From positions 21,565,470 to 21,629,469 of the forward strand of contig NC_069005.1 of assembly GCF_001194135.2 (NCBI RefSeq): DNA of 64,000 nt, written 5' to 3'. Source of the DNA: Octopus bimaculoides. Taxonomy: Eukaryota. This document shows positions 33,695 through 34,630 of this stretch, one piece after another. Numbering within the stretch: position 1 is the stretch's first letter; every line of letters begins with the position of its first letter. The notes under the pieces are model-generated. The model did not search any database and had not been told where the DNA came from. It saw only the letters and a list, made by a program, of their open reading frames with translations. Position numbers and translations under genes: made by a program.

Positions 33695-34399
33695 TTATTA
33701 TTATTATTATTATATATATATGTACACATACATACGTACATATATATATTTATTGTAATGTGTGTCCCTTAAGCGTTTGTGTTGGTGACTATAGGCATGT
33801 ATGCCTATAAACACCCTTCTTCCCCCTATTATTGTCAGACATTCATGACAAAAAGGTTCCTATGCTGATAAATAGATTTTTGGCTAATGACAATTGAATT
33901 GCATACTTTGAACAATCAATATCATGACTCATCTCTCATTATACTCACACACACACACAAACTGTACATGCAAAATAGATCTAAACACATGAACACATAT
34001 GCATACAATCATCCATAGAGCATTATATGTGTGTCTGTGTCTGTGTATTTATTTGAACAGAAAATGGATGAATTGCACAATAACATTAAAAGTGTTGTAA
34101 TCTTTTTACAAAAACTGCATCAAAAACAAGTGTAATATTACATTTATATATAAAATTATCATCATCATAATATATACATACATATATAAATGAAATATTA
34201 CACTTGTATTTTGTCTCTGTATTTCTCTTGTGTTTACTCACATATAAGTAAGTCCCTAGTCATGTATGCACAGTGTATGTGTGAGTATATATATACATAT
34301 ATTTAACAGGAATGTCAACAAAAGAAAGAAAGAGACCTCGATATTATGCAATTAGAGGAATTTATCTGTAAAAATATGTGACACTTATTCAGTAGCCAT

Positions 34400-34461
34400 G
34401 ATAAAACTCCGAGTTTCAGATACCAGAGTGGGGGGTCCACTCCAACATCTTTTCAGTTATC
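34400..34461 (-). ncRNA. Type I hammerhead ribozyme motif, family 1 (G8>A)
   Basis: GATAA / CTGAAAA / long stem II GATGTTGGAGTGG..CACTCTGGTATC / T / GAAA CTCGGA GTT | TTATC. Confidence 0.75.
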
Positions 34462-34568
34462 CAGCCACTGGAAATTCCCTTTGTTTATTTTCCCTTTGTT
34501 TATTTCCCTTTGCTTTTAATTTCCCTTCGGGTTTAACGGTCATTTTTCAAAGGAATTTCCACTGGCTG

Positions 34569-34630
34569 GATAACTGAAGAGATGTTGGAGTGGACTCCCC
34601 ACTCTGGCATCCAAAACTCGGAGTTTTATC
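34569..34630 (+). ncRNA. Type I hammerhead ribozyme motif, family 1 (G12>A)
   Basis: Stem I GATAA:TTATC; core CTGAAGA 34574-34580; 13-bp stem II 34581-34593:34599-34611; AAAA in place of GAAA; stem III ACT-CGG-AGT; triplet GUU. Confidence 0.75.

What the first reader, a model, noticed from the sequence alone, without database searches (positions are those of the whole stretch)
34295..34630. Palindromic element carrying two divergent type I hammerhead ribozymes
Seen: ~79-bp inverted arms, each a complete HHR topology: 5-bp stem I GATAA:TTATC, CTGAAGA core, long stem II, one extra pyrimidine, GAAA, tiny near-palindromic stem III (ACTCGGAGT) and a GUU site. Left arm has G8>A and right arm G12>A, so their consensus is intact. 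Established: PLEs carry minimal type I HHRs in their pseudo-LTRs, often cleave as dimers and form inverted terminal structures; metazoan retrozymes are non-autonomous HHR repeats that make circRNAs. Inference: a non-autonomous fold-back PLE/retrozyme family in octopus. Read-through RNA would bury the ribozyme in dsRNA, a built-in off switch. I cannot confirm novelty.
Basis: partly seen in the sequence, partly recalled or inferred. Interest (0 to 1): 0.85.

Follow-up and report, generated by a model that had tools for sequence, protein, structure and literature searches.

The report
Dead inverted Penelope-element hammerhead remnants
The palindrome with two outward-facing hammerhead ribozyme motifs is real, but it is best read as an ordinary, decayed insertion scar of a Penelope-like retrotransposon, one of two in this window, and not as a new circular-RNA-making element.

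Summary
Arms 34400-34481 and 34549-34630 are 82 nt and 91% complementary. Each has a complete type I hammerhead (HHR) layout with one core substitution: G8>A on the left, G12>A on the right. The right arm stops at a 519-N assembly gap, so its true end is unknown.

A second, fully assembled copy lies at 32609-32875 in the opposite orientation. It shows that the repeat continues 37 nt beyond each HHR. A conserved segment of about 65 nt (the "tail") sits at one end only, and (TA)n runs flank the element.

In helix II, arms within a copy are more alike (93% and 73%) than matching arms between copies (53-67%). The inner junctions also differ, and one arm is cut off inside the CUGANGA box. So each palindrome was made at insertion, not inherited as a unit.

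The features match the published signature of Penelope-like element (PLE) insertions:
- head-to-head 5'-truncated copies;
- a tail at one end;
- an AT-rich or (TA)n target;
- the HHR near the 3' end.

All four arms are now catalytically disabled, mostly through CpG decay. There are no direct tandem HHRs, so this is not a retrozyme and no circular RNA is expected. No RT or GIY-YIG reading frame lies nearby.

Verdict: a new member of a known kind, of low interest.

The parts
34286..34302 (.). (TA)n-type microsatellite that flanks copy 1 on the left, taken to be the target sequence
   Evidence: Sequence. TA runs cover only 2-3% of the window.
34303..34363 (-). Copy 1 'tail': a 3'-terminal extension outside the inverted repeat, on the left arm. 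It is conserved in copy 2.
   Evidence: About 90% identical to 32810-32875 in copy 2. It has no inverted partner in copy 2.
34364..34399 (-). Copy 1, left arm: the 36-nt region 3' of the hammerhead (ATGG + CTACTGAATAAGTGTCACATATTTTTACAGAT)
   Evidence: Aligns to both arms of copy 2. Its inverted partner in copy 1 would lie in the assembly gap.
34400..34461 (-). Copy 1, left-arm hammerhead motif (c1T). The core has G8>A. The CpG at G12 has decayed to TG, so G12 is kept. Predicted cut between 34405 and 34404.
   Evidence: It scores 81.3 bits against a covariance model I built from the four arms.
34462..34548 (-). Copy 1: 20-nt leader of the left arm (34462-34481) plus a 67-nt spacer. The spacer holds 3-4 tandem 15-nt units (TTCCCTTTGTTTATT on the + strand) that repeat the inner end of the arm.
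34549..34630 (+). Copy 1, right arm (c1N): a 20-nt leader and the hammerhead motif at 34569-34630. G12>A arose by decay of the CpG to CA. Predicted cut after 34625. The arm is truncated by the assembly gap.
   Evidence: It scores 86.3 bits against the four-arm model.
34631..35149 (.). Assembly gap (519 N) that hides the outer end of the right arm. (TA)n resumes at 35150-35168.
32609..32716 (-). Copy 2, arm without a tail (c2N): 3' region 32609-32645, hammerhead motif 32646-32706 (G12>A by CpG decay; helix III also mutated), and a short leader to about 32716. It abuts (TA)n at 32591-32608.
   Evidence: It scores 83.8 bits against the four-arm model.
32720..32875 (+). Copy 2, tail-bearing arm (c2T): a hammerhead 5'-truncated inside the CUGANGA box (about 32720-32772, with CG-AAA intact), 3' region 32773-32809, and tail 32810-32875. 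It is followed by (TA)n at 32876-32909.

Best explanation
Both loci (34303-34630 plus the gap, and 32609-32875) are dead products of Penelope-like element (PLE) retrotransposition into (TA)n microsatellites.

Proposed mechanism:
1. A PLE RNA carries a minimal type I hammerhead about 40-105 nt from the point where reverse transcription starts.
2. The PLE reverse transcriptase/GIY-YIG endonuclease nicks both strands of an AT-rich target and primes cDNA synthesis from both strands.
3. Both cDNAs stop early (5' truncation) and are joined in the middle.
4. The result is two head-to-head copies with their 3' ends, and so their hammerheads, pointing outward.
5. Reverse transcription can start at either of two internal sites, which explains why only one arm carries the extra tail.

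After insertion the copies decayed neutrally, mainly at methylated CpGs. This destroyed G12 in two arms. A plain transition destroyed G8 in a third, and the fourth arm never had a complete core.

What is shown: the anatomy, the independent origin of the two palindromes, the link with TA runs, and the decay pattern.

What is inferred from published PLE biology: priming on both strands, and the origin of the tail.

What cannot be told from this window: whether the template RNA was a full-length PLE or a short non-autonomous derivative of one.
For: Anatomy:
- There are two copies with the same layout, in opposite orientations.
- Each hammerhead reads outward from the centre. It is followed by a conserved 36-37-nt 3' region, and on one arm by a conserved tail of about 61-66 nt.

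Independent origin of each palindrome:
- Helix II identity is 93.5% between the arms of copy 1 and 73% between the arms of copy 2. It is only 53-67% between copies.
- The four arms have four different 5' ends. One has a leader of at least 20 nt plus the spacer, one a 20-nt leader, one a leader of about 10 nt, and one is truncated inside CUGANGA.
- Similarity between the two copies is confined to the element itself. There is no segmental inverted duplication.

Target:
- All three assembled element ends abut TA runs, and TA also resumes after the gap. TA runs cover only 2-3% of the window.

Match to published PLE behaviour:
- PLE insertions are strongly 5'-truncated. They often carry an adjacent inverted 5'-truncated copy, have a tail at one end only, favour (TA)n, carry the HHR near the 3' end, and break short-read assemblies (PMC8557442).
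- A purified PLE protein cleaves and extends both DNA strands at AT-rich sites. It starts reverse transcription at two internal sites, and the sequence between them is the tail (PMC11167929).
- PLE minimal HHRs have a long helix II, a 4-5-bp helix I and a palindromic helix III. Pairs on opposite strands 100-700 bp apart have already been seen (PMC4209133).

Decay:
- Differences between arms are 21 transitions to 1 transversion. Many sites show TG in one arm and CA in the other, the mark of a decayed CpG.
- The window's CpG observed/expected ratio is 0.34.
Against: - No reverse transcriptase or GIY-YIG reading frame lies nearby. The region has about one stop per 13 codons. Stop-free fragments of at least 55 aa between 27.6 and 39.4 kb, low-complexity ones excluded, gave no Pfam match.
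- The parent element could not be found. None of the searchable collections holds animal genomes.
- The tail is about 61-66 nt, against the 30-40 bp usually reported.
- The unpaired nucleotide lies on the 3' side of helix II, before G12. In typical PLE HHRs it lies between A9 and 10.1.
- There are only two copies. With four arms, no compensatory base-pair changes can be shown.
- Gene conversion between the arms, plus deletions at the centre of the palindrome, could mimic independent origin.
Confidence: 0.78

Rival explanations
1. One reading: a non-autonomous fold-back PLE or retrozyme family that is copied as a palindromic unit. Its hammerheads would process transcripts into circular RNAs, and the hairpin would act as an off switch.
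For: Two short copies with no reading frame and the same general layout lie within 2 kb of each other. The ancestral cores were intact. Non-autonomous PLE derivatives and PLE-related retrozymes are known (PMC8557442; bioRxiv 10.64898/2026.07.22.740005). The hairpin is very stable, at -118 to -152 kcal/mol.
Against: Arms group by copy, not by side. The centres are not homologous: copy 1 has a 67-nt spacer and 20-nt leaders, while copy 2 has almost no spacer and one arm truncated inside the core. The hammerheads are on opposite strands, so no transcript has two sense cleavage sites or a dimer partner on the same RNA. Retrozymes are defined as direct tandem repeats (PMC7229834). Every extant core is mutated, and the substitutions look neutral.
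Confidence: 0.12
2. A miniature inverted-repeat or foldback DNA transposon, for example Tc1/mariner-like with a TA target duplication, whose terminal repeats happen to derive from a PLE fragment.
For: Near-perfect palindromes of 200-270 bp flanked by TA.
Against: A tail of about 65 nt is conserved between the copies. It lies outside the inverted repeat, on one side only, between the repeat and the TA run. The conserved termini are therefore not inverted repeats of each other. The inner junctions vary like 5' truncations. The 3'-ends-outward geometry is what priming from both strands predicts.
Confidence: 0.04
3. A hairpin RNA or microRNA-like gene that has been selected for function.
For: Hits below threshold to microRNA hairpin models, at 27-48 bits against gathering scores of 90-211. 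The predicted hairpins are very stable.
Against: Such hits are generic for any long inverted repeat and fall far below the thresholds. The arms have diverged by 9% and 17-19%, with mismatches spread along the stem. The two copies differ most in the stem core.
Confidence: 0.03
4. An assembly artefact (a fold-back chimera at a contig end) or a chance similarity.
For: The right arm ends exactly at a gap. Palindromic PLE structures are known to disturb short-read assemblies (PMC8557442).
Against: The arms differ at 7 of 82 positions and are separated by a unique 67-nt spacer. An independent, fully assembled copy has the same structure. The pattern search expects 0.05 such motifs and finds 3.
Confidence: 0.02

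Closest known systems
Minimal type I hammerheads in the pseudo-LTRs of Penelope-like elements (Cervera & de la Pena 2014, PMC4209133; dimer cleavage by Lunse, Weinberg & Breaker, cited in PMC6765202)
   Same: Type I topology, a long helix II, a 5-bp helix I, a G10.1-C11.1 closing pair, and a tiny near-palindromic helix III that would extend to 4+4 bp in a dimer. They occur as scattered single motifs or pairs on opposite strands, interpreted as truncated PLEs.
   Different: Helix II is longer here (13 bp against 6-8). The extra unpaired nucleotide is a pyrimidine just before G12, not a base between A9 and 10.1. No full PLE is linked. All extant cores are mutated.
Canonical PLE insertion architecture (Evgen'ev & Arkhipova 2005; Craig et al. 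2021, PMC8557442) and its biochemical basis (Frangieh et al. 2024, PMC11167929)
   Same: Strong 5' truncation, an adjacent inverted 5'-truncated copy that forms an inverted repeat, an extension at one end only, an AT-rich or (TA)n target, the hammerhead near the 3' end, and disruption of short-read assembly.
   Different: Here both members of the pair are extremely short (about 100-240 nt), so the whole insertion is little more than two hammerheads. The tail is about 61-66 nt, not 30-40.
Metazoan non-LTR retrozymes (Cervera & de la Pena 2020, PMC7229834; Li et al. 2026 bioRxiv 10.64898/2026.07.22.740005)
   Same: Non-coding, AT-rich, hammerhead-bearing repeats related to PLE pseudo-LTRs.
   Different: Retrozymes are direct tandem repeats of 150-450 bp with canonical type I hammerheads, and they release circular RNAs. 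Here the two motifs are inverted, of the minimal kind and mutated. No unit is bounded by two sense cleavage sites.
Twin priming of LINE-1 (Ostertag & Kazazian 2001; cited from my own knowledge, not checked here)
   Same: Target-primed reverse transcription from both DNA ends gives inverted, truncated halves within one insertion.
   Different: L1 twin priming gives an inversion with a deletion inside one copy, not a near-symmetrical head-to-head palindrome. It also uses a different enzyme family.

Membership tests
Hammerhead ribozyme, type I | Three helices around the core, with helix I open (the 5' and 3' ends lie in helix I) | tested here: met
   The pattern search finds it in three arms. 86.9% of pair cells are paired in register, against 32-55% when the partners are slid out of register. 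Predicted folds keep helices I and II.
Hammerhead ribozyme, type I | Intact conserved core: C3 U4 G5 A6 N7 G8 A9, G12 A13 A14, A15.1-U16.1, H17 | tested here: not met
   c1T has A8. c1N and c2N have A12. c2T lacks C3-A6. The core is intact only in the ancestor inferred by using one copy as the outgroup for the other.
Hammerhead ribozyme, type I | Match to an Rfam hammerhead covariance model at the gathering score | tested here: not met
   No hammerhead family matches at the gathering score in the whole window. None matches at E<=10 in either copy.
Hammerhead ribozyme, type I | Site-specific self-cleavage | not testable with these tools
   This needs in vitro transcription. G8 and G12 substitutions are known to abolish or cripple catalysis (G8C in a PLE hammerhead, PMC11167929; G12 as the general base, established knowledge).
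PLE minimal hammerhead (Cervera & de la Pena 2014) | Long helix II, short (4-5 bp) helix I, G10.1-C11.1, small palindromic helix III | tested here: met
   Helix II is 13 bp, helix I is 5 bp (GAUAA:UUAUC), and the G-C closing pair is present in three arms. ACUCGGAGU is self-complementary at 8 of 9 positions.
PLE minimal hammerhead (Cervera & de la Pena 2014) | [quoted passage not shown] | tested here: not met
   The extra nucleotide (C or U) lies on the 3' side of helix II, immediately before G12 (alignment column 44).
PLE minimal hammerhead (Cervera & de la Pena 2014) | Located in the pseudo-LTR of an element encoding RT and GIY-YIG endonuclease | tested here: inconclusive
   No such reading frame is in the neighbourhood. 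The source genome could not be searched. Most published PLE hammerheads are likewise solitary.
PLE insertion architecture | Variable 5' truncation with an adjacent inverted 5'-truncated copy | tested here: met
   Four different inner ends, head-to-head arms and outward 3' ends in both copies.
PLE insertion architecture | Tail extension at only one end of the insertion | tested here: met
   In copy 2 the tail 32810-32875 is on one arm only, and the other arm runs straight into (TA)n. In copy 1 the left arm carries the tail, and the right end lies in the gap. The tail is 61-66 nt, against the 30-40 bp reported.
PLE insertion architecture | AT-rich or (TA)n microsatellite target | tested here: met
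   All assembled ends abut TA runs, which cover 2-3% of the window.
Metazoan non-LTR retrozyme | Direct tandem repeats (150-450 bp) that each carry a sense type I hammerhead, so that two cleavages release a unit | tested here: not met
   There are only inverted pairs and no direct repeat of the motif. Definition from PMC7229834.
Metazoan non-LTR retrozyme | Expression as small circular RNAs | not testable with these tools
   No transcriptome data are available here.
MITE / foldback DNA transposon | Conserved termini that are inverted repeats of each other, plus a target-site duplication | tested here: not met
   One conserved terminus is the unpaired tail. A duplication cannot be scored inside TA repeats.

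The most novel reading that the evidence does not exclude
These may be members of an abundant, short, non-autonomous family that parasitises PLEs. Its RNA would consist of little more than the hammerhead and the site where reverse transcription starts. Because it routinely inserts as a palindrome, it would seed the genome with hairpin-RNA loci. Those loci could feed small-RNA silencing of the parent PLE, or serve as substrates for the extensive A-to-I RNA editing of cephalopods. Two copies in 59 kb would then reflect a very high copy number.
Probability: 0.1. Interest if true: 0.55.

Novelty: new member of a known kind. Interest (0 to 1): 0.2.

Why it matters
It matters little beyond annotation. 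The locus is a clean, compact example of the PLE 'inverted pair plus one-sided tail' insertion signature, and that geometry matches the recent in vitro finding that a PLE enzyme primes from both DNA strands.

In practice:
- Such palindromes should be masked as PLE remnants. They should not be called ribozyme genes, retrozymes or microRNA hairpins.
- They explain assembly breaks next to TA microsatellites.

The near-exclusive CpG-type decay of the arms hints that these insertions were methylated in the germline. That point could be of modest interest for TE methylation in this lineage.

Tried and rejected
- Rfam at gathering score on the whole window, and at E<=10 on both copies. No hammerhead family matched, only generic microRNA hairpin models far below threshold.
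- Exact-pattern scans of the metagenome and viral contig collections with AAACTCGGAGTTTTATCNNNNCTAC. No hits. These collections hold no animal genomes.
- Full-text search of the paper library for five DNA/RNA strings from the motif. No hits.
- Supplements of the octopus repeat paper and of Craig et al. 2021. Neither holds a repeat library.
- Protein search with the stop-free 82-aa translation across copy 2, hoping to catch spurious reading frames called on other copies. No homologue.
Pfam on joined stop-free fragments between 27.6 and 39.4 kb found nothing.
- A covariance model built from the four arms, run over the whole window with filters off. It found only the four arms, and the next best hit (17 bits, 23895-23942) is a microsatellite.
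- The idea that the G12>A shared by both 'right' arms proves the palindrome was inherited. Rejected, because the site is a CpG. It reads CG in c2T, TG in c1T, and CA in c1N and c2N, so the changes are parallel deaminations.
- A large inverted segmental duplication containing both copies. Rejected.
- A reading frame starting at the ATG at the base of helix II, as in the Anolis PLE. It closes after about 19-21 codons.

Full report
**1. The observation**

The window holds an inverted repeat with arms 34400-34481 and 34549-34630. The arms are 82 nt and 91% complementary, with a 67-nt spacer. Read outward from the centre, each arm has the full layout of a type I hammerhead (HHR):
- a 5-bp helix I (GAUAA:UUAUC);
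- the CUGANGA box;
- a 13-bp helix II;
- one extra pyrimidine;
- GAAA;
- a near-palindromic ACUCGGAGU;
- a GUU site.

The right arm (+ strand, 34569-34630) has A in place of G12. The left arm (- strand, 34461-34400) has A in place of G8.

I ran a type I HHR pattern search over the window that allowed one core mismatch. It finds exactly three motifs: these two arms and one arm of a second copy. The expectation from sequences simulated with the same dinucleotide composition is 0.05.

Two caveats apply:
- The right arm ends exactly at a 519-N assembly gap (34631-35149), so the assembly, not biology, sets the end of the repeat.
- No Rfam hammerhead model matches, either at the gathering score or at E<=10. 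Only generic hairpin (microRNA) models match, far below their thresholds.

**2. A second copy shows the full element**

A relaxed search for the 5' half of the motif found a third site at 32682-32701. It belongs to a complete element at 32609-32875 that lies in the opposite orientation to the first and is fully assembled. This copy shows three things that the gap hides in copy 1:
- The inverted repeat continues 37 nt beyond each hammerhead (...CTACYGAATAATTGTCACATATTATTTACAGAT).
- One arm only is followed by a further segment of about 65 nt, the "tail" (32810-32875). It is about 90% identical to 34303-34363 in copy 1.
- The element is bounded on both sides by (TA)n.

Copy 1 is also preceded by a TA run (34286-34302), and TA resumes straight after its gap (35150-35168). 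TA runs cover only 2-3% of the window, so three assembled ends all abutting TA is unlikely by chance, at roughly 10^-5.

Homology between the two copies is confined to the element and the adjoining TA run, so they are not parts of a larger inverted duplication. I built a covariance model from the four arms and ran it without filters over the whole window. It finds only those four arms.

**3. Each palindrome was made at insertion**

I aligned the four arms in hammerhead sense.

| Comparison (helix II) | Identity |
|---|---|
| Two arms of copy 1 | 93.5% |
| Two arms of copy 2 | 73% |
| Any arm of copy 1 against any arm of copy 2 | 53-67% |

The arms therefore group by copy, not by side. The inner junctions also differ:
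- Copy 1 has 20-nt leaders on both arms plus a 67-nt spacer. The spacer is partly a tandem expansion of the inner end of the left arm.
- Copy 2 has essentially no spacer. One arm has a leader of about 10 nt. The other is cut off inside the CUGANGA box, so it never was a complete hammerhead at this locus.

Variable 5' ends are the mark of abortive reverse transcription. They are not what a fixed fold-back unit would show.

One feature seemed to argue the other way: both tail-less arms read CAAAAC (G12>A), while both tail-bearing arms keep G12. The site is a CpG, however. It reads CG in c2T, TG in c1T, and CA in c1N and c2N. These are parallel deaminations of a hypermutable dinucleotide, not shared ancestry.

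**4. Decay**

| Copy | Transitions | Transversions | Jukes-Cantor distance between arms |
|---|---|---|---|
| 1 | 6 | 1 | 0.09 |
| 2 | 15 | 0 | 0.19 |

Many of the differing sites read TG in one arm and CA in the other, which points to an ancestral CpG. The window as a whole has a CpG observed/expected ratio of 0.34.

Using each copy as the outgroup for the other, the ancestral cores were intact: CUGAAGA...C-GAAA. The extant ones are not, with A8, A12, A12, and one arm truncated. G8 and G12 are the catalytic guanines. A G8 substitution abolishes cleavage in a PLE hammerhead (PMC11167929), and the role of G12 as the general base is established knowledge.

With only four sequences there are no compensatory pairs. 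Structural support therefore rests on in-register pairing, which is 86.9% against 32-55% when the partners are slid out of register. Single-arm folds are only moderately better than shuffled sequence (z = -1.1 to -2.5).

**5. What it is**

Every structural feature matches the published signature of Penelope-like element (PLE) insertions.

Craig et al. 2021 (PMC8557442) describe:
- a high degree of 5' truncation;
- an inverted 5'-truncated copy often adjacent, forming inverted repeats;
- a tail often present at only one end;
- hammerheads near the 3' ends;
- (TA)n as a preferred target;
- resulting problems for short-read assemblies.

Frangieh et al. 2024 (PMC11167929) show that a purified PLE protein cleaves and extends both DNA strands at AT-rich sites. 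It starts reverse transcription at two internal sites, and the sequence between those sites is the tail.

Priming from both 3'-OH ends of a broken target predicts exactly this geometry. The two copies lie head-to-head, and the 3' ends, with their hammerheads, point outward.

Cervera & de la Pena 2014 (PMC4209133) describe PLE minimal hammerheads with a long helix II, a 4-5-bp helix I and a palindromic helix III. They already noted pairs of such motifs 100-700 bp apart on opposite strands, and read them as truncated PLEs.

PLEs are documented in octopus genomes, with an old expansion at a Jukes-Cantor distance of about 0.2 (PMC13282606). I could not verify that this window comes from an octopus.

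**6. What it is not**

*Not a retrozyme.* Metazoan retrozymes are direct tandem repeats of 150-450 bp whose flanking sense hammerheads release a unit that circularises (PMC7229834). Here the motifs are on opposite strands. Any transcript carries one sense and one antisense copy. That allows at most one cut, no excised unit, and no partner on the same RNA for the dimeric helix III that such minimal hammerheads need (PMC6765202).

*No evidence for an off switch.* The full palindromic transcripts would fold as hairpins of -118 to -152 kcal/mol, against -17 kcal/mol for the hammerhead fold. That is true of any inverted repeat, and it is not evidence of a selected off switch.

*Not a DNA transposon.* A foldback DNA transposon (MITE) is unlikely, because one conserved terminus is the unpaired tail.

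*Not an assembly artefact.* The arms have diverged, a unique spacer separates them, and an independently assembled copy has the same structure.

**7. Open points**

- No RT or GIY-YIG reading frame is linked.
- The parent family could not be retrieved, because none of the searchable collections contains animal genomes.
- The window cannot show whether the template was a full-length PLE RNA or a short non-autonomous derivative. Non-autonomous PLE derivatives are known.
- The tail is longer than the usual 30-40 bp.
- The bulged nucleotide sits on the 3' side of helix II, not the 5' side.

**8. Verdict**

It is an ordinary, dead PLE insertion remnant, present twice in this window. It is not a new class of ribozyme element.

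- Novelty: a new member of a known kind.
- Interest: 0.2.
- Confidence in the PLE-insertion reading: about 0.78.

Noticed in passing
window 34400-34630 and 32609-32809: Differences between the two arms of each palindrome are almost all transitions (21 against 1 transversion). Many sites read TG in one arm and CA in the other, which implies decayed CpGs. The window's CpG observed/expected ratio is 0.34. This suggests the region, including these insertions, was methylated in the germline.
   Followed up: partly
window 30442-30624: Another self-complementary (palindromic) segment, about 78% over 185 nt, with no hammerhead motif. It lies next to an (AAT)n run.
   Followed up: no
window 32376-32547: A weaker palindromic segment (about 70% over 177 nt). 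It lies just beyond the 20-N gap and the TA repeat that flank copy 2. Its nature is unknown.
   Followed up: no
window 30618-30793, 30809-30986, 33327-33453, 37278-37447: A dispersed repeat family (70-80% identity), SINE-like and headed by (AAT)n. One member lies between the two hammerhead palindromes.
   Followed up: no
window 42080-42492 and 43030-43363: A GC-rich unit repeated twice, with similar stop-free translations (GLVKPDGNTRLQS.LAEFLQLDALPNANHSESVVGAFTCHPHENGHARNGVFYVP). It is probably another repeat family.
   Followed up: no
window 20916-21239 (+) and 50149-50466 (-): Two stop-free stretches with similar translations (KKIQE.QLIMILFN.FP...). This indicates a further dispersed repeat family.
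   Followed up: no
all 15 N gaps (e.g. 11439, 24738, 32571, 43849, 50564, 62076): Most assembly gaps are bordered by TA or CA/GT microsatellites on at least one side. The scaffold looks like a short-read assembly that breaks at simple repeats.
   Followed up: partly
window 34475-34535: A 15-nt tandem repeat (TTCCCTTTGTTTATT, 3-4 units) fills the spacer of copy 1. It repeats the inner end of the left arm, so it looks like a local expansion of PLE leader sequence.
   Followed up: partly
window 34582 (+), 34448 (-), 32693 (-): An ATG sits at the base of helix II (GAUG) in three arms. This recalls the Anolis PLE, whose reading frame starts at helix II. Here the frame closes after about 19-21 codons, so it is not coding.
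   Followed up: partly
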